NCBI RefSeq assembly: GCF_001194135.2
Contig: NC_068983.1
Coordinates: 120,281,804 to 120,345,803 of the forward strand
Source of the DNA: Octopus bimaculoides
Taxonomy: Eukaryota
Length of the DNA: 64,000 nt
Reading direction: 5' to 3'
Shown: piece after piece, positions 2,077 through 62,867 of the stretch
How the letters are laid out: every line of letters begins with the position of its first letter
Numbering within the stretch: position 1 is the stretch's first letter
Position numbers and translations under genes: made by a program
Notes under the pieces: model-generated
Database searches by the model: none
Seen by the model: only the letters and a program-made list of their open reading frames with translations
Told to the model about the DNA's origin: nothing

Positions 2077-3532
2077 CAGAGGTTCCCAACTATTTTCAGC
2101 CTATGGACCCTTTTGATTTCTATTTTACTCTAACAGGACTCCTACAGCTATTTGATGTTTAAAAATGTCCTAATATATTTTTATAATTAAATATTATTAG
2201 GAATTGTATTAAAAAGATTTTTGAAATATTTTGTGTATTGTATTGGTAATGCGGTTTTTTTCAGTTGCATGAAAAATTAGATGGGGATGGGATAAACTAC
2301 CTGCATCAACTTGCTATAAAAACAGGTAGTAATTTTACTTTGTCCTTATTCTTAGTGCAAGTTTTGAAGAGTGTAGTTCAATTTTAACAGTTATTTTTTC
2401 AAAAGCTATAACAGAAGTGACAAAGGAGCATTTTCGGCATATTTTGCTTTATGAGTTCAACGAAGGCAACAAAGCAACAGAAAGTGCAAGGAATATTAAT
2501 GCAGAATATGGGGATCAGACAGTAAGGGTAAACCAGTGTCAACAGTGGTTCCAGAAATTCCAAGCCAGAAACTACAGCCTAGAAGACAAGCATCATTCTG
2601 GAAGATCTGTAGAGCTTGACAAGGATGTCCTGCAAACCCAGGTGGAACAAAATCCCAACATAACTGTTGAGGAACTAGCAGAGAAGCTTGGATTTAGTCA
2701 TTCAACTATTCATCGACACCTGCATGCTATCGGAAAAGTCAGCAAATTAGATCAATGGGTTCCTCACCAACTTTCTGAGTCTAATTGCATGCAGAGAGTG
2801 AATGTGTACTCTTCTTTGCTGTCATGCCTCACAAATGAACCTTTTTGGGACCAAATAATGACTGGTGATGAGAAATGGGTTCTCTATAAAATGTGAAGCA
2901 CCAAAGATAGTGGGAAGGGAAAGGAGAAATACTGGCACCCCAGGCTAAAGAAGGTCTTCACCCATGTAAGGCGCTGTTATCTGTTTGGTGGGATATGAAA
3001 GGTTTAGTTAACTTTGAACTTTTAAACCCAAACCAAACAGTAACAAAGGAGATCTACTGCAAGCAACTTAAGTCAGCACTAGAAGAAAAACAACCATCTT
3101 TGGTTTCAAGACGAAAGGTATTCTTCCATCAGGATAATGCTCAGCTACATACAGCAGGGATGACATTCCAAAGGCTAGAGCAGTTTGAATGGGAAATGAT
3201 GCCCCACCCACCATATTTGCTGGACATTGCCCCATCTGATAATCATTTATTCTGTAGATGAGGTCAGAACAGTACTGGAGGAGTATTTTTCATCACAGAC
3301 AAGTCAATTTTGGAAGAGAGGCCTTGCAAGTCTACCAGATAGATGGAAGAGTATTGTAGAAAATGAAGGAGAGTATATTTTAGATTAAAAAAGAACTTTG
3401 TTTATCTTTAATTTTTAAAAATAAAAACAGCATTATTTATGGGATGACCCAATAGATGTATATCCAATTTATTGTAAATAAAATCTATTGTGGACTCCCA
3501 AGGGCCATGTGGACTCTGGTTGAGAACCACTG
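2077..3532. mobile_element. hAT-like MITE interrupted by a mariner
   Basis: TIRs CAGAGGTTCCCAAC / GTTGAGAACCACTG. 8-bp TSD ctgtagac (2069-2076) / ctgtaaac (3533-3540). Confidence 0.75.
2241..3454 (+). mobile_element. Near full-length degenerate mariner transposon; transposase pseudogene
   Basis: Fragments 2417-2896 and 2995-3261 carry mariner motifs (WVPHQL, MTGDEKWV, FHQDNA, HPPYLLDIAPSD) broken by stops and frameshifts. The 3' TIR reads ttatttatgggatgacccaata; the 5' TIR is partly deleted; TA at both ends. Confidence 0.92.
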
Positions 3533-9655: not shown

Positions 9656-11205
9656 TAACCTTTCATAAAACTGTGTAACAAGACGATTTTTTTGTCTTTG
9701 GTCAGTAAGTTTTATTTCCTATTTGTTTCTATCTAGAAATCAAAGGAAATCACTACTATTCCCTTTAAACTTTGCTCTTGTTTACCTGGACATCAATGTT
9801 TTGAAACTGACAGATTCAGTGCTGAGTTGCTGAAGCAGAAATATCGTTATAGCAAATATTCTGCTCAGTACCATAGACTTGCTTGTCAGTTGCTTGACCG
9901 TAACGAGCATGTTCCTTAGTCGCTGACAATATGTGCATCTCTGATCATGAGCAGGGGTATTCGGGGAGCATCATAGTTATATGTTGAGAGAAATTCTTCA
10001 GGGTTTGAATCAATGTAGCAAAAGTAAAGTTTGAAAGAAATATTAGTTATTTTTCATACTTTCTAGGGGTAAGCAAAAAGGAAATAACAGTTGCTACCCA
10101 AGGACAAAAATCGTGTTACACAATGTTGAGGATGCTACTATTCCAAACATCAGTTATGGTACCTTCCTTCCTGTACTATCTGATTATCTATGTGGGTGAC
10201 TAGCATGTGATCTACTTCAACAGCTATTTAAAGCACCTCAATAACTATCCTAATGTTCTTTAATTATGCTTGCAATTATATTGTTACTCTTGAACAACAA
10301 GAGCACTCAGTGCAGCAAAGAAGAGATTATAAAAAGATAATATATACTTTGTGAATTACATGAGCATTACTTAGAATTTTATGTTTAACAGTAATTTAAA
10401 TATCAAACTTGGAAGGTCAGTGTACAAATTTGTCAGCATTTCCTTGTTTATACAAATGAATATATTTTTTAAACAACATTGACATTATAATGCTATGTAC
10501 ATTTATATTTAACATGTTTAAATGTACTCAAATGAGGAAAGACTTTTGCTGTGGTAACTACCTTCAAAAAGAATAGTGAAAACAAACTGAGCTGGGATTG
10601 TATTGTAGGATGGATTGGATTGTAGGACATGTGTTTCTGCATCATTATGCTTTATTAGCTACAGAAACTGAATTTGTTACTCATAGCCCACTAAGAACTG
10701 TTGGTGTACGTGTAGTAAATTTGCTAGTGTGTATGTTAAGCTTTGTTAAGCTAAAATTAATTCATTAACAACATACTAAGCAACAATGATTAAAAAAATG
10801 AGTACATTCATATTTAATAAGTTTGTGTACATTCACACATAGCAAAGACCTTCGCAGTAGTAGCTGTTTTGGAAGAGAAATTCGTATAGACAATGGGCAT
10901 GAAAACATACCAAGGTGGACAATGAATACTGTCATAGGACAGTAATAGGACAAACGTTGCTATGTTGTCATGCTTCACAGTATAAACACCAAATTTGTTT
11001 TCAGCTCCTGTAGCTGATAAACAAGGTAGATATAAATATACACAGCTTTATTTTAATCACCATTGCTTAGTGCATCTATAATTGGCTGAGAATTAAAAAT
11101 TTAAATTTACTGTAAATCTACATGAAACATGAGACTCTGAGTAGTGCCTGTGTAAACCAGAAGAGAATGTATTAGCTATGCATGTATGCATGCCTGTATG
11201 TATGT

Positions 11206-20880: not shown

Positions 20881-22022
20881 AACAAATAAATAAATAAACA
20901 GAGTCCAGTGCATCCATTTATCAGGGAGTGGGATGGTTACAATGCTGCTAAGAGGGCCCAGCATTGAGAACAAATGATATAAACTTGTGTTTATCATAAG
21001 ATCTCCTCCTACACCTGCTCTGTATATCATAACCAGTAATACTACTAAGTACAGTACTATGACTACACTGGAAGTAGATTGGATGATGATACTCTATGTG
21101 GAGCTCTAAATTCAACAGTAGCAGTCTAATTGTTCACAAGATTTACTATATAAATAAATAAAAGAAATAAGGCAGTGAGGTGGAAGAACTATTAGCAGGC
21201 CGGGCAAAATGCTTAATGGCATTTTTTCTGTCTTTACGTTCTGTAAAATAAGTACCAGTTGAACTCTAGGGTTAATGTAATAGTCTTAACCCGCTCCATT
21301 GAACTTGCTGGCCTTGTGCCAAAGTTTGAAACCAATAAATAAAGGAAATGTTTGATTTATAGACACAGTAAACTATATATAGTTAATAAGACAAACAATA
21401 TAAACATCCACTTGTAATTTTACTTTGGTTGAGAAGAATTGATAATCTTTTAAAATGTTATTAGAATTTGGCAGTTAAGATTTGAAACTTTGGTGTATGA
21501 ATAGAAATATTCCCTCATATCTGAAGCTATCTTAAGAGCATCACACCCACCTGCAAAGAAATGTACAGGCATCACCTACATACATGATCACTGCATAGAT
21601 TAGCATCTGTCAAGTGTGTGCACACCCATACAGATTTTAGAAGTAACAGCTATTGGAAGTTTCTCGTTGCCTTCTGCCTCTCCCTCTCTTTTTCTCTCTC
21701 TCTCACACACACACATTATGCTATTCTTTTACTTGTTTCAGTCATTGAACCATGGCTATGATGGGTGGGATATCCTCTTGAAGGGTTTCGTTGAACAAAC
21801 TGACTCCAGAACATATATTTAAGTCTGGTACTTATTCTGTTTTTTCTCTTTTGTTGAACTACTAAGTTACAAGAGCATAAAGAGACAAGCACAGGCATGA
21901 CTGAGTGGTAAGAAGTTTGCTTCCCAACCACATGGTTCTAGTCCCACTGTGTGGCACCTTGGGCCAACCAAAGCCTTGTGAGTGGATTTGGTAGACAGAA
22001 ACTGAAAGAAGCCCATCATATT

Positions 22023-22261
22023 ATCATCATCGTTTAACGTCCGCTTTCCATGCTAGCATGGGTTGGACGATTTGACTGAGGACTGGTGAAACCGGATGGC
22101 TACACCAGGCTCCAATCTGATTTGGCAGAGTTTCTACAGCTGGATGCCCTTCCTAACGCCAACCACTCTGAGAGTGTAGTGGGTGCTTTTACGTGCCACC
22201 GGCACGAAGGCCAGTCAGGCGGTACTGGCAACGGCCACGCTCAAATGGTGTATTTTACGTG
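22023..22261 (-). mobile_element. Young RTE LINE 3' tail running into an N-gap
   Basis: Reverse complement of 33700-33925; near-identical to 24403-24621 and 37103-37210. Confidence 0.85.
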
Positions 22262-24360: not shown

Positions 24361-24402
24361 CAGGCCAGAAAATATTCAAAATATTTTTCGACTGAAACAA
24401 AA

Positions 24403-24621
24403 TCATCATCATCGTTTAACGTCCGCTTTCCATGCTAGCATGGGTTGGACGATTTGACTGAGGACTGGTGAAACCGGATGGCAACACCAGGCTCCAGTCT
24501 GATTTGGCAGAGTTTCTACAGCTGGATGCCCTTCCTAACGCCAACCACTCAGAGAGTGTAGTGGGTGCTTTTACGTGTCACCCGCACGAAAACGGCCACG
24601 CTCGAAATGGTGTCTTTTATG
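24403..24621 (-). mobile_element. Young RTE LINE 3' tail running into an N-gap
   Basis: Near-identical to 22023-22261. Confidence 0.85.
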
Positions 24622-33094: not shown

Positions 33095-33221
33095 GGTGCG
33101 AGAAAATGTTTGAGCATTAATTATTGTAGAGAAGGTATGAAATACAGAGGAAAGTAAGAGAATGAAAATAGAAATGAGATACATAAGGATATTGTATTTG
33201 CAGTTCCATTATTCAAGTAGA

Positions 33222-33925
33222 GAAAAGCTGAACATTAGAAGCATCAGTTGTGGCGTGCAAGAGAGACGATTGTGCTGGTATGGACATGTGGTGAGAATGG
33301 ATGAGGATAGCTGTGTGAAAAAGTGCCACACCCTAACAGTTGAGGGAACCCGTGGAAGAGGTAGGCCCAGGAAGACCTGGGCTGAGGTGGTGAGGCAAGA
33401 CCTTTGTACATTGGGCCTCACCGAGGCGATGACTACTGACCGAGACCTTTAGAAATGTGCTGTGCATGAGAAGACCCGGCAAGCCAAGTAAGATCGTTGC
33501 CAGTGCCCCTGGACTGGTTCTTGTGCGGGTGGCACATGAGATGCACCATTTTGAGCGTGNNNNNNNNNNTACATTGGGCCTCACCGAGGCGATGACTACT
33601 GACCGAGACCTTTAGAAATGTGCTGTGCATGAGAAGACCCGGCAAGCCAAGTAAGATCGTTGCCAGTGCCCCTGGACTGGCTTGTGCGGGTGGCACATAA
33701 AAGACACCATTTCGAGCGTGGCTGTTTTCGTGCGGGTGACACGTAAAAGCACCCACTACACTCTCTGAGTGGTTGGCGTTGGGAAGGGCATTCAGCTGTA
33801 GAAACTCTGCCAAATTAGACTGGAGCCTGGTGTTGCCATCCGGTTTCACCAGTCCTCAGTCAAATCGTCCAACCCATGCTAGCATGGAAGGCGGATGTTA
33901 AACGATGATGATGATGATGATGAAT
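33222..33925 (+). mobile_element. RTE-clade LINE 3' end (ORF2 C-terminus, 3' UTR, (GAT)n tail)
   Basis: ERRLCWYGHVVRMDEDSCVKKCHTLTVEGTRGRGRPRKTW is a typical RTE C-terminus. The tail ends in gatgatgat. About 150 bp are duplicated across the 10-N gap. Confidence 0.9.
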
Positions 33926-60335: not shown

Positions 60336-60438
60336 AAAATGAGAATGGCATACATTAATAAAATGATGTTACAACGCTTACCTAGTGCTCCTAATCATTT
60401 AGATCACCTGTGAACTAAACTCCCATACTTTGTATATA

Positions 60439-60516
<78 letters not shown>

Positions 60517-60616
60517 ATAAAAATAAATTCATTAATTCATAAAAATGTATAAATTTTGATTAATTTTTGTTTCTTCCTTTCTTTTTTCTTCAACAGAGCT
60601 GCTGTAAAACATCAAT

Positions 60617-61414
60617 ATGAAGCTTGAATATTTCCATGATAAAAAACTTATTCCACTTTCTGACAAAAACAAATTAACCAAATGTAACCAAATCACTACT
60701 CGGGTAATCTTTGTCTTCATCCTCTTTGCTGGATTATCACAAATTGGTCTTGGAATAGGGCTCTTACTCTCATGCCGCAGCAATCTAGAAAATATATCCT
60801 GTGCCTTCTCTTTAAAGGCACATCCATGCACCGGATTAGTGATACCAACCTACCTTGGTTGCTTGGTTATTTGTATTGCATTATTTGGATTTGGATTTCT
60901 TGGACGCCGAGCTACTGCTATCTTACTAGCTATTGCTATGACTGCAGAAATCTACTTTGGTTTAATGTCAATCTATGCTGAACCAATTTTATTTACTGAC
61001 TATTTTCGAGTTTTTAATTCAGTTCAAATATGTCCCCAGAATTCCTCCAGCCCAGATAATCTTATAAAATGCTGGAATGGGATCACACAATTATATCCAT
61101 ATTGTTTTCTCTACAGAAATTTAATAAGGACAGACTGTATGCAAGGATATGATCTTTATTTCTCACAATTTAATGAAACTTTATCATCAACAAACATTGA
61201 ACCATGTGTCACTGATATTAGCATGGCTGTGAGTTCCATTTATACAGGTTATCGATATTTTGCAGGTCCTCTTATGTTGCTAAATGCCACAATCTGTCTT
61301 TTACTAGTTCCAGGTTTAGATTTCTTATACCAACAAAATATAGAACTGAATGAATCTCATGTGGTTTCAGGACCAAAAGAACTTCAAAGACAAAATATTT
61401 CTTCATCTGTATGA
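60617..61414 (+). CDS. Four-transmembrane, tetraspanin-like orphan membrane protein (265 aa), single coding exon
   Basis: Uninterrupted 265-codon ORF in otherwise repeat-filled DNA. Strong pyrimidine-rich acceptor (ttcttcctttcttttttcttcaacAG, ends 60596), in-frame TAA at 60605 upstream of the ATG, and AATAAA at 61483. Four hydrophobic segments (~aa 30-51, 73-95, 99-121, 215-238), a short GRR loop, and a ~90-aa Cys-containing loop between TM3 and TM4. Confidence 0.85.
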   Translation: MKLEYFHDKKLIPLSDKNKLTKCNQITTRVIFVFILFAGLSQIGLGIGLLLSCRSNLENISCAFSLKAHPCTGLVIPTYLGCLVICIALFGFGFLGRRATAILLAIAMTAEIYFGLMSIYAEPILFTDYFRVFNSVQICPQNSSSPDNLIKCWNGITQLYPYCFLYRNLIRTDCMQGYDLYFSQFNETLSSTNIEPCVTDISMAVSSIYTGYRYFAGPLMLLNATICLLLVPGLDFLYQQNIELNESHVVSGPKELQRQNISSSV

Positions 61415-61482
61415 TCCAATGGACCCTCTTTTCTACATTTGTAAATTATCATTTGAATATGGAAAGAAAATTCACATTTCAC

Positions 61483-61488
61483 AATAAA
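61483..61488 (+). promoter_or_regulatory. Candidate polyadenylation signal AATAAA of the 4-TM gene
   Basis: First AATAAA, ~70 nt after the TGA stop. Confidence 0.4.
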
Positions 61489-62867
61489 AATGGTCTCATC
61501 TAGCAGATAAAATTAAACAGAGAAGTACTGGAAATACATCTCATTAAAATATTTAGTACTCTCTTCTAAATATCTTTGTTCCCAGCTGTTATGAAAAGAC
61601 TCTCTCTCTTTTGGAATTGGAGCCAATATAAGAGTGATCTTATATTATACAAACATTAAGAAAATATATCAGTTTTCAGATGACATCAGCATATTAATAG
61701 CTGAAGCTAAAAACAAACTGGTCTGATATAGAGAACATATTATTTATTTCACATCATGCATGCTCTGGATTTACACAAACTATGATTAACTTTAAATCAG
61801 AATGTGCAAGAGTCAAGTGACTTCAGATCTATGCCAAATTTATATAACCTATAATAGCTAAGAGAAAATGGCTTATTTGTTGAAATTAAATTCTTGAAAA
61901 GAAAGAATCTACTTTATTGGTCTCTAGTACTAATTAATGAAGTACTGATGTTGAAGTAATCATTGATTCATTATGTGTCACATGTCATATATAATAAGTT
62001 GTTGCAGTTCAGAATATGTACATATAAACTATATACATATTTAAAGTTGTCAGCTACTACTTCCATTGTATGTAGTAGCATTGGCTTTGCTTCAAACTGG
62101 TCTGGTTTTGTGGATTATTTGATACATTTTAGGAAGATTCCTTCTGAGGTATCAATGTCACTATTACTGATAATCAAAACTGGATAACTTATTGTCAAAT
62201 GAATATTCTTTCACAAACCCACCATTATCTAATTGGACTTTAACACTGATTTATTAAAATATTATTTCATTTATATTTCAAATGTTCTGAAATTGAAATT
62301 ATTATTGCTCTCTCTTTCCCTCTCTCTCTCTGCCAGTGGTAAAGTGACAGAATCATTAAAGCATTAGACAAAATGCTTTGCGGTATTAGTGCAAGCACTT
62401 AGTATTCTGAGTTCAAATCTGACTGAGGTCAACTTTGCCTTTCATCTGGGGTTGATAAAATAAAGTACCAACCAGGCACTGAAATTGATCCATTGATATA
62501 CCCCAAAGTTTCAGGCCTTTTATCTGTGTTAGAAACAGCTATAAAGACAAAAGAATGAATAAAAATAGTAGGAATTACTAATATAATGGAAGGGAAGATA
62601 GACTGATGGTAGAAACAGATATTTAGCTCTTCCTCCTCCTCTTCCTATATGCACCATCAACTGGATGATCAATTCTTGATCACTTTTTTAAATAAACTCT
62701 TGCTATTGTGATCAGTTTTGGATAGTTCTTTGCTGTTGGTGTAAAGATTGGTTGCTTTTCTACTGTCTAATATCATTTATCAAGCTGGTCTTACATTTCT
62801 GAGTTCAAAATAGATAATGCCTTTCACTCTTCTTGAGGGTTGATAACATTTTGGAGTTGATTTTTGT

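What the first reader, a model, noticed from the sequence alone, without database searches (positions are those of the whole stretch)
60617..61414. Orphan intronless four-pass membrane protein with tetraspanin architecture but no CCG motif
Seen: four hydrophobic helices, a GxxxxGxG pattern in TM1 (FAGLSQIGLGIG), a tiny GRR inner loop, a polar Glu in TM3 (AEI), and a large TM3-TM4 loop containing WNGITQLYPYC and a distal PC..DI. There are 3 Cys in loop 1 (C53, C62, C71) and 5 in loop 2 (C139, C152, C163, C174, C197), with sequons at N59, N142 and N186. Established: tetraspanins have this topology, polar TM residues, a W-x-x-x-Q...CCG motif and a final Cys before TM4, and are normally multi-exon. 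Inference: this is a highly diverged tetraspanin-like (or MS4A/claudin-like) protein, possibly retro-derived and lineage-restricted. The odd Cys count in each loop hints at an inter-loop disulfide. It could represent an undescribed membrane-protein family in this lineage.
Basis: partly seen in the sequence, partly recalled or inferred. Interest (0 to 1): 0.72.

Follow-up and report, generated by a model that had tools for sequence, protein, structure and literature searches.

The report
Divergent CCG-less tetraspanin-like octopus gene
The 265-codon reading frame is a real octopus gene under purifying selection, for a four-pass membrane protein that is a distant relative of tetraspanins lacking their signature CCG motif; its family also occurs in snails, an annelid and a ribbon worm, so it is neither an orphan nor confined to cephalopods.

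Summary
It is a real gene. dN/dS is about 0.11 against a close congener and 0.13 against Argonauta, and the CDS has no indels while the flanks have many. It is not an orphan. An exhaustive profile search found 22 relatives: octopod orthologues and paralogues, seven gastropods, the annelid Owenia and the nemertean Tubulanus. No Pfam model reaches threshold, and neither PDB sequence search nor Foldseek gives a significant hit. A family profile does align full length and in register with PDB-verified CD81, CD9 and CD53 (hhalign 92%, E 5e-7). Reversed and segment-shuffled controls score far lower, and CD20, claudin, PMP22, TM4SF1 and sarcospan each score below 4%. C163, C174 and C197 align with the second Cys of CCG, the PxxC Cys and the last EC2 Cys; the first CCG Cys is a Tyr. 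C62 (loop 1) and C152 (loop 2) are present or absent together, which supports an inter-loop disulfide. The four-helix core is one exon in every locus examined. In four non-cephalopod species the gene lies antisense inside a CFAP300 gene. Verdict: a new variant of a known kind, of moderate interest.

The parts
60563..60596 (+). Polypyrimidine tract ending in AG (60595-60596): probable 3' splice site of an intron in the 5'UTR
   Evidence: Read from the sequence. The tract and CAG are kept in the congener contig L004 and in Argonauta L001, and conservation starts right after the AG. This is inference; no transcript data were available.
60597..60616 (+). Short 5'UTR part of the coding exon, with an in-frame TAA at 60605-60607 that rules out an N-terminal extension from an upstream exon
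   Evidence: GCTGCTG...ATCAA(T/G)ATG is conserved between octopus and Argonauta.
60617..61414 (+). Complete CDS, 265 aa plus stop, in a single exon
   Evidence: Against the congener there are 19 synonymous and 7 non-synonymous differences, dN/dS 0.11 and no indels. Against Argonauta dN/dS is 0.13.
60701..60769 (+). TM1 (about aa 29-51), with the glycine pattern G39/G44/G46/G48 and Q42
   Evidence: Hydropathy and AF2 helix 14-64. G39 and G44 align with conserved TM1 glycines of CD81.
60770..60838 (+). Small extracellular loop EC1 (about aa 52-74), with C53, C62, C71 and the conserved CAFSLKAHPC
   Evidence: C53 and C71 are invariant in all 22 family members. C62 is present only where C152 is present.
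60839..60901 (+). TM2 (about aa 75-95), ending in FGFGF; this is FGFGC in most relatives
   Evidence: The motif aligns with the tetraspanin FLGCxG motif.
60902..60910 (+). Three-residue cytoplasmic turn G96-R97-R98
   Evidence: Invariant in cephalopods and G-R-R/K in most relatives.
60911..60979 (+). TM3 (about aa 99-121), with the buried acidic residue E111
   Evidence: Position 111 is E or D in 17 of 22 members. It aligns with the conserved TM3 Glu of tetraspanins, CD81 E105.
60980..61261 (+). Large extracellular loop EC2 (about aa 122-215), helical, with C139, C152-W153, C163, C174, C197 and the conserved FTDYF motif
   Evidence: AF2 places helices at 127-131, 135-141, 146-159, 161-175 and 178-184. 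C163, C174 and C197 align with the second Cys of CCG, the PxxC Cys and the last EC2 Cys.
61262..61330 (+). TM4 (about aa 216-238), with G217-P218 and N223
61331..61411 (+). Cytoplasmic C-terminal tail (aa 239-265), poorly conserved outside octopods
   Evidence: pLDDT is below 50 at the end of the tail.
61415..61640 (+). Conserved 3'UTR with AATAAA at 61483-61488
   Evidence: Mean column identity with the congener and Argonauta is 74%. The hexamer itself varies (ATTAAA, TATAAA), so the poly(A) site is not settled.

Best explanation
The ORF is a functional single-coding-exon gene for a four-pass membrane protein with both termini in the cytoplasm. It belongs to an old lophotrochozoan family that is a distant, CCG-less relative of the tetraspanins. 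Shown: the gene is under purifying selection, the family spans three phyla, and it aligns in register with tetraspanins over TM1 to TM4. Inferred: it works as tetraspanins do. The four helices would form a compact membrane bundle held partly by the buried TM3 glutamate E111. The helical, disulfide-stapled EC2 head would sit over the small loop and bind partner membrane proteins in cis, organising them in the membrane. The family's own feature is a cysteine-bearing EC1. C53 and C71 are invariant, and C62 most probably bonds to C152 in EC2. That bond would tie the head to the small loop and so limit the open/closed head movement described for CD81 and CD53. The remaining cysteines (C139, C163, C174, C197, plus C53 and C71) would form three more disulfides, but their pairing is not resolved. 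The intronless core, and its position inside a CFAP300 intron in four other species, suggest origin by an ancient retroposition of a tetraspanin mRNA.
For: Real gene:
- dN/dS is 0.11 against the congener contig L004 (19 synonymous, 7 non-synonymous differences). The CDS has no indels, against 45 gaps in 875 nt of 3' flank.
- dN/dS is 0.13 against Argonauta.

Family:
- Five close hits and 22 true hits in a search of 1.84 billion representatives.
- Named sources are Argonauta, O. bimaculoides, Haliotis, Pomacea, Littorina, Aplysia, Bulinus, Bradybaena, Physella, Owenia and Tubulanus.

Tetraspanin relationship:
- hhalign of the family against 7 tetraspanins gives Prob 92.2, E 6e-7, score 54.6.
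- Against PDB-verified CD81+CD9+CD53 alone it gives Prob 92.4 over 209 columns.
- Reversed controls score 16-17. Eighty shuffles that keep topology give mean 18.5, SD 3.2, maximum 26.3.
- Other 4TM families score 0.2-3.8%.
- Three members give sub-threshold PF00335 hits, the best at E 6.6e-4 and nearly full length.
- FGFGC aligns with FLGC, E111 with the TM3 Glu, and C163, C174 and C197 with CCG-C2, PxxC and the last Cys.
- Paralogues keep 'CG' after the Tyr/Ala/Gly that replaces the first Cys.

Inter-loop disulfide: C62 and C152-W153 co-occur in 12 of 22 members and are both absent in the other 10.

Structure: the AF2 model with the 22-sequence alignment has pLDDT 81 and pTM 0.73, with four long helices and a helical EC2.

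Single-exon core in every locus examined.
Against: - The defining CCG motif is absent.
- No family member reaches the Pfam PF00335 gathering score; the best is 19.8 bits against 32.1.
- A PDB profile search finds no tetraspanin.
- Foldseek finds nothing significant. The best membrane hits are CD20 (prob 0.77) and PRPH2 (prob 0.66), both at E above 0.6.
- The hhalign probability of 92% is below the usual 95% comfort level, and the gastropod subset alone gives only 4.5%.
- The tetraspanin TM1 Asn and TM4 Glu are not kept, and the alignment needs an 8-residue gap after TM2.
- The C62/C152 co-occurrence could reflect a single loss, because every member lacking both is a gastropod.
- There are no expression, localisation or partner data, so the function is inferred by analogy only.
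Confidence: 0.68

Rival explanations
1. An independent four-pass membrane protein family that converged on tetraspanin topology (short EC1, tiny inner loop, large cysteine-rich EC2) and shares no ancestry or mechanism with tetraspanins. It could, for example, be a subunit of a channel or receptor complex.
For: No CCG motif. No Pfam, PDB-sequence or Foldseek hit at significance. Three EC1 cysteines are unknown in canonical tetraspanins. Two of the three canonical polar TM residues are missing. The gastropod half of the family shows no profile similarity to tetraspanins on its own.
Against: The profile-profile score is about 11 SD above shuffles that keep topology and composition, and it is specific to tetraspanins among six 4TM families tried. 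Motifs line up in register: GC after TM2, the TM3 Glu, and three of the four EC2 cysteines. Three members give weak PF00335 hits. An automatic UniRef rule names two members Tetraspanin.
Confidence: 0.2
2. A member of another known 4TM family: MS4A/CD20, claudin/PMP22, L6/TM4SF or sarcospan.
For: Foldseek lists CD20 and Fc-epsilon-RI beta among its non-significant top hits. Sarcospan gives 3.8% in hhalign.
Against: hhalign gives CD20 0.6%, CLDN4 0.6%, PMP22 0.4% and TM4SF1 0.2%. The sarcospan match is out of register, with family TM1 aligned to sarcospan residues 109-164. No member hits PF04103, PF00822 or PF05805 at E of 0.1 or better. Claudins have their large loop first, whereas here the large loop is between TM3 and TM4.
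Confidence: 0.04
3. A chance or decaying ORF, such as a dead retrocopy, with no function.
For: An intronless CDS in repeat-rich, AT-rich intergenic-looking DNA. No transcript evidence was obtained here.
Against: dN/dS is 0.11-0.13. The frame is intact with no indels across octopods while the flanks are full of indels. All eight loop cysteines are conserved. The ORF is longer than any in 200 shuffles. The family is conserved across phyla.
Confidence: 0.02

Closest known systems
Tetraspanins (Pfam PF00335; e.g. CD9, CD81, CD53, CD151)
   Same: Both have four TM helices with N and C termini inside, an EC1 of about 22 aa, an inner loop of 3-4 aa, and a helical EC2 of about 94 aa with disulfides. 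These match the features described in PMC5390497. A Gly-Cys motif ends TM2 in most family members. There is a buried Glu in TM3. EC2 cysteines sit at the positions of CCG-C2, PxxC and the last Cys, and a W-x-x-x-x-Q stretch precedes the CCG position. The profile-profile match is full length.
   Different: The first Cys of CCG is replaced by Tyr, Ala, Gly or Ser, so the signature motif is missing. EC1 carries two invariant cysteines plus a third, C62, that is paired by co-occurrence with an extra EC2 cysteine, C152. The TM1 Asn and TM4 Glu are not kept. The stretch between the GC motif and the TM3 Glu is 8 residues shorter. The Pfam model does not reach threshold. The core is encoded by one exon.
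Divergent tetraspanins with solved structures: peripherin-2/ROM1 (7zw1) and uroplakin Ia/Ib (8jj5)
   Same: TM-score is about 0.4 normalised by the query.
   Different: E-values are 0.17-1.1, which is not significant. These proteins keep CCG and have much larger EC2 domains.
MS4A/CD20 family (PF04103) and sarcospan
   Same: Four-pass proteins of similar size. CD20 appears in the Foldseek lists with prob 0.77-0.97 but E above 0.3.
   Different: There is no sequence-profile similarity (0.6% and 3.8%) and no Pfam hit. CD20 has a short EC2 with a single disulfide.

Membership tests
Tetraspanin (PF00335) | Four TM helices, cytoplasmic termini, EC1 of 13-30 aa, inner loop of about 4 aa, EC2 of 70-130 aa (PMC5390497) | tested here: met
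   Hydropathy and the AF2 model give EC1 of about 22 aa, inner loop GRR and EC2 of about 94 aa. Lysine-rich N-terminus and the GRR turn fit the positive-inside rule.
Tetraspanin (PF00335) | CCG signature motif in EC2 | tested here: not met
   The window has Y162-C163-F164. Paralogues have A/G/S-C-G. No family member has CCG at this position.
Tetraspanin (PF00335) | At least 4 EC2 cysteines forming at least 2 disulfides, including a PxxC-type Cys and a last Cys shortly before TM4 | tested here: inconclusive
   There are five EC2 cysteines. C174 and C197 align with the PxxC and last Cys of CD81. Owenia lacks C139 and C174 together, which would argue for a different pairing.
Tetraspanin (PF00335) | Match to the Pfam model at the gathering score (32.1 bits) | tested here: not met
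   The window protein gives no hit. The best family member, P0009, scores 19.8 bits at E 6.6e-4. Only 3 of 22 members hit at E of 0.1 or better.
Tetraspanin (PF00335) | Conserved polar residues in the TM helices (Asn in TM1, Glu/Gln in TM3, Glu in TM4) | tested here: inconclusive
   The TM3 Glu is kept and aligned (E111 to CD81 E105). The TM1 Asn aligns with F32 and the TM4 Glu with a Leu. The family has its own Q42 and N223 instead.
Tetraspanin (PF00335) | Detectable homology by profile-profile comparison | tested here: met
   hhalign gives Prob 92.2-92.4, E about 5e-7, full length. Reversed and segment-shuffled controls and five other 4TM families all score far lower. This is below 95%, so it is strong but not final.
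Tetraspanin (PF00335) | Fold similarity to solved tetraspanins | tested here: inconclusive
   Foldseek against the PDB gives no hit at E of 0.001 or better. PRPH2 scores TM 0.40 and the uroplakin tetraspanin 0.39. Foldseek is weak on all-helical membrane bundles.
MS4A/CD20 (PF04103) | Sequence or profile match to the family | tested here: not met
   hhalign gives 0.6%. No member gives a Pfam hit.
Claudin/PMP22 (PF00822 clan) | Large first loop with the W-GLW-C-C motif, and a profile match | tested here: not met
   The first loop is the small one and lacks the motif. hhalign gives CLDN4 0.6% and PMP22 0.4%.

The most novel reading that the evidence does not exclude
An ancient family, so far seen only in Lophotrochozoa, arose when a tetraspanin mRNA was retroposed into an intron of the ciliary gene CFAP300. 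It then lost the first Cys of CCG and rewired its disulfides into an EC1-EC2 staple. It has stayed nested antisense in that intron for over 500 million years in nemerteans, annelids and gastropods, which may point to co-regulation or a role in ciliated cells. In cephalopods it duplicated and may have left the host gene.
Probability: 0.25. Interest if true: 0.65.

Novelty: new variant of a known kind. Interest (0 to 1): 0.45.

Why it matters
CCG is treated as the signature motif of tetraspanins. A family that keeps the rest of the architecture, has lost one CCG cysteine, and has gained a cysteine-bearing small loop would show how the EC2 disulfide scaffold can be rewired. It would also give a natural test of whether tying EC1 to EC2 blocks the open/closed head movement proposed for CD81 and CD53. 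The family fills a gap in annotation: NCBI calls its members 'uncharacterized' and no Pfam model covers them. The antisense position inside CFAP300 in a nemertean, an annelid and two gastropods is a clean example of a nested-gene arrangement conserved across phyla. For the octopus genome itself, this is one more conserved membrane protein gene, not a cephalopod invention.

Tried and rejected
- Pfam, NCBIfam and PDB sequence searches of the window protein gave only noise such as PsbL and AIM1.
- A PDB profile search with the family alignment gave only Cox6B at E 0.8, a CX9C-like cysteine spacing that I judged to be chance.
- The search for homologous proteins with the 22-sequence alignment scored only the 8000 most word-rich candidates and returned 4 hits, so it added little beyond the Tubulanus name.
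- Foldseek on both AF2 models gave nothing significant.
- A second copy of the gene in the window: none. tblastn with all paralogues hits only 60617-61411. In Argonauta the paralogue lies about 71 kb downstream, which would be outside this window.
- CFAP300 exons in the window: tblastn with seven conserved exon peptides from Owenia and Tubulanus, and with six CFAP300 fragments, found nothing in the window, in the Argonauta loci, in L003, in L012 or in Littorina. The last protein search, meant to fetch a cephalopod CFAP300, returned only short fragments.
- My first guess that the longer distant homologues were vertebrate was wrong; they are gastropod.
- The C-terminal and N-terminal extensions of P0003 are artefacts of prokaryote-style gene calling, because they read through in-frame stops. 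I ignored them.
- Literature searches for the locus name, CCG-less mollusc tetraspanins, intronless tetraspanin retrogenes and CFAP300 nested genes found nothing relevant.

Full report
OBSERVATION. The ORF at 60617..61414 (+) encodes 265 aa from an ATG. It is the longest ATG ORF in this 33%-GC window; 200 shuffles gave a longest ORF of mean 108, maximum 236. Hydropathy gives four hydrophobic segments. N59, N142 and N186 are present, and so are N223, N245 and N260, which fall in TM4 or the tail. All quoted motifs are present and there is no CCG. The window is animal DNA with microsatellites, assembly gaps and transposon debris.

IS IT A GENE? Yes. A genomic contig from a close congener (L004, Logan SRR11869391) is collinear with the window. 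Its CDS is 96.7% identical, with 19 synonymous and 7 non-synonymous differences (dN/dS 0.11) and no indels. The 3' flank is 87% identical with 45 gaps in 875 nt, and the 5' flank is 80% identical with 13 gaps in 102 nt. Against the Argonauta hians orthologue (82% aa identity) dN/dS is 0.13.

GENE STRUCTURE. Just upstream of the ATG there is a polypyrimidine tract ending in an AG at 60595-60596, and conservation with Argonauta starts right after that AG. An in-frame TAA at 60605-60607 lies between it and the ATG. I infer a non-coding upstream exon, with the whole CDS contained in one exon. About 225 nt of 3'UTR are conserved. No transcript data were available to confirm any of this.

RELATIVES. 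The first search found five cephalopod proteins. They were a 97% congener, the Argonauta orthologue, a 52% homologue from ENA sample ERZ21867824, and a 46-47% paralogue in Argonauta and an octopus. The O. bimaculoides copy of that paralogue is UniRef A0A0L8GAQ4, named 'Tetraspanin'. In Argonauta the two paralogues lie about 71 kb apart in the same orientation. The window holds only one copy.

An exhaustive profile search of 1.84 billion representative proteins found 22 true relatives. The named ones are as follows:
- gastropods: Haliotis, Pomacea, Littorina, Aplysia, Bulinus, Bradybaena and Physella;
- the annelid Owenia fusiformis, named 'Tetraspanin' in UniRef;
- the nemertean Tubulanus polymorphus.

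NCBI calls all of them uncharacterized or hypothetical. The gene is therefore neither an orphan nor cephalopod-specific. As far as the named hits show, the family is lophotrochozoan.

WHAT FAMILY? No Pfam or NCBIfam model reaches threshold for the window protein or any relative. Three of 22 relatives give sub-threshold PF00335 hits. The best is 19.8 bits at E 6.6e-4 and covers model positions 11-223 of 225. PDB sequence and profile searches find no tetraspanin.

I then compared the 22-sequence family alignment (A2) with human tetraspanins by hhalign. CD81, CD9 and CD53 were checked against PDB chains 7jic_B, 6k4j_A and 6wvg_A and differ only at engineered positions.
- Against seven tetraspanins: Prob 92.2, E 6e-7, score 54.6.
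- Against the three verified ones alone: Prob 92.4 over 209 columns, from TM1 to TM4.
- Reversing either side drops the score to 16-17.
- Eighty shuffles of the tetraspanin columns within each TM helix and loop, which keep topology and composition, gave mean 18.5, SD 3.2, maximum 26.3.
- Single sequences of CD20, claudin-4, PMP22, TM4SF1 and sarcospan gave 0.2-3.8%. CD9, CD151 and CD53 gave 58, 34 and 20%.

The similarity is therefore specific to tetraspanins and is not explained by hydrophobic topology. Two caveats remain. A probability of 92% is not final, and the gastropod half of the family alone gives only 4.5%.

ANATOMY IN THE ALIGNMENT.
- T21-K22-C23 aligns with T7-K8-C9 of CD81. From my own knowledge, C9 is a palmitoylation site.
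- G39 and G44 align with conserved TM1 glycines.
- FGFG(C/F)-GRR aligns with FLGCxG.
- E111 aligns with the TM3 Glu.
- W153...Q158...Y162-C163-(F/G)164 aligns with the stretch that ends in C-C-G. C163 therefore corresponds to the second CCG cysteine, Tyr162 replaces the first, and the Gly is kept in several paralogues.
- C174 aligns with the PxxC cysteine.
- E195-P196-C197 aligns with the E-G/D-C that precedes TM4.
- Not kept: the TM1 Asn and the TM4 Glu. The alignment also needs an 8-residue gap after TM2.

Against the defining features summarised in PMC5390497, the topology and loop sizes are met. CCG is not met. The Pfam threshold is not met. I therefore call the family tetraspanin-like, a probable divergent branch of the superfamily, and not a tetraspanin proper.

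STRUCTURE. With six sequences AlphaFold2 gave pLDDT 60. With the 22-sequence alignment it gave pLDDT 81 and pTM 0.73. The model has four long helices (14-64, 70-95, 97-120, 191-251) and a helical EC2; only residues 178-190 and the termini fall below 50. Foldseek against the PDB gave nothing significant with either model. The better model's best membrane hits were CD20 and PRPH2 at E 0.7-1.1. This test is inconclusive.

CYSTEINES. Across the 22 sequences, C53, C71, C163 and C197 are invariant, and C139 and C174 are present in 21. C62 and C152-W153 occur together in 12 sequences (cephalopods, Owenia, Tubulanus and five unnamed). Both are absent in the other 10. Seven of those ten are named and all are gastropods; the remaining three have no source name. 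It may, however, reflect as few as one joint loss. Owenia lacks C139 and C174 together, which hints that those two are partners. That conflicts with the canonical CCG-C2 to PxxC pairing, so the rest of the map is open.

GENE STRUCTURE AND CONTEXT ELSEWHERE. The four-helix core is one exon in every locus read: window, congener, both Argonauta paralogues, two ERZ21867824 paralogues, Haliotis, Littorina, Owenia, Tubulanus and Physella. Physella and one Argonauta isoform add a small 5' coding exon.

Unexpectedly, in Tubulanus, Owenia, Haliotis and Physella the gene lies inside the span of a CFAP300 gene (PF14926) on the opposite strand. In Owenia and Tubulanus I mapped the host exons by tblastx. 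The nested gene sits in the same intron in both, the one after the exon ending ...YKDL(I)R. An intronless gene in a host intron, shared by three phyla, fits an ancient retroposition; that is inference.

In the window I found no CFAP300 exon in the 60 kb on one side or the 2.6 kb on the other. I found none within 10 kb of the Argonauta copies, of the two ERZ21867824 copies, or of the Littorina gene. Either cephalopod introns are larger than the DNA I could read, or the arrangement was lost. This is unresolved.

MECHANISM. The following are shown: a conserved gene under purifying selection, a four-pass topology, and a specific profile relationship to tetraspanins. The rest is inferred by analogy. 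It would be a membrane organiser whose disulfide-stapled helical head binds partner proteins in cis. A buried TM3 Glu would contribute to helix packing. A family-specific EC1-EC2 staple would restrict head movement. There are no expression, localisation or partner data.

VERDICT. The gene is a new variant of a known kind, not a new kind. No paper mentions the family, but UniRef already labels two members 'Tetraspanin'. Interest is moderate, 0.45. The CCG-less disulfide rewiring and the nested-gene synteny across phyla are the points worth following up.

Noticed in passing
L005/L009 (Tubulanus), L006/L008 (Owenia), L007 (Haliotis), L011 (Physella); not seen in window 1-64000: The homologue of the window gene lies antisense inside a CFAP300 (PF14926) gene in a nemertean, an annelid and two gastropods. 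In Owenia and Tubulanus it sits in the same intron. No CFAP300 exon was found in the window or in the cephalopod loci available.
   Followed up: partly
L001 and L002 (Argonauta hians contig BAAFZT010000033.1): Two paralogues of the gene lie about 71 kb apart in the same orientation, and both carry the same source name, LOC115209622. By analogy, the octopus paralogue (UniRef A0A0L8GAQ4 type) should lie downstream of the window's 3' end.
   Followed up: partly
window 2417-2896 (+): ORF fragment with a Mos1/mariner transposase HTH domain (PF17906, E 1e-18). It is a truncated transposase remnant.
   Followed up: partly
window 22020-22208, 24402-24621 and, inverted, 33696-33915: Three copies of an interspersed repeat of about 190-220 nt, 94-97% identical, each carrying the same short ORF start (MKPDG(Y/N)TRLQS(D/N)LAEFLQL...). 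Two copies abut runs of N, which are assembly gaps.
   Followed up: no
window 33162-33452 (+): The ORF fragment ...LCWYGHVVRMDED...RGRGRPRKTWAEVV... looks, from memory, like the C-terminal tail of a non-LTR retrotransposon ORF2. It gave no Pfam hit.
   Followed up: partly
window ~22.3 kb, ~24.6-24.9 kb, ~36.65-37.1 kb: Runs of N totalling 798 bases. These are assembly gaps, and they create artefactual long X-containing ORFs in the ORF list.
   Followed up: no
L003 (ENA ERZ21867824 ctg117670l) 10001-10936: The database protein P0003 reads through two in-frame stops and starts at a non-ATG codon well upstream of the probable Met. Its N- and C-terminal extensions are artefacts of prokaryote-style gene calling on eukaryotic DNA.
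   Followed up: yes
window 60420-60520: A compound (TG)n/(TA)n/(CA)n microsatellite lies about 100 nt upstream of the putative splice acceptor. It is absent from the congener contig at that position, which accounts for part of the indel-rich 5' flank.
   Followed up: no
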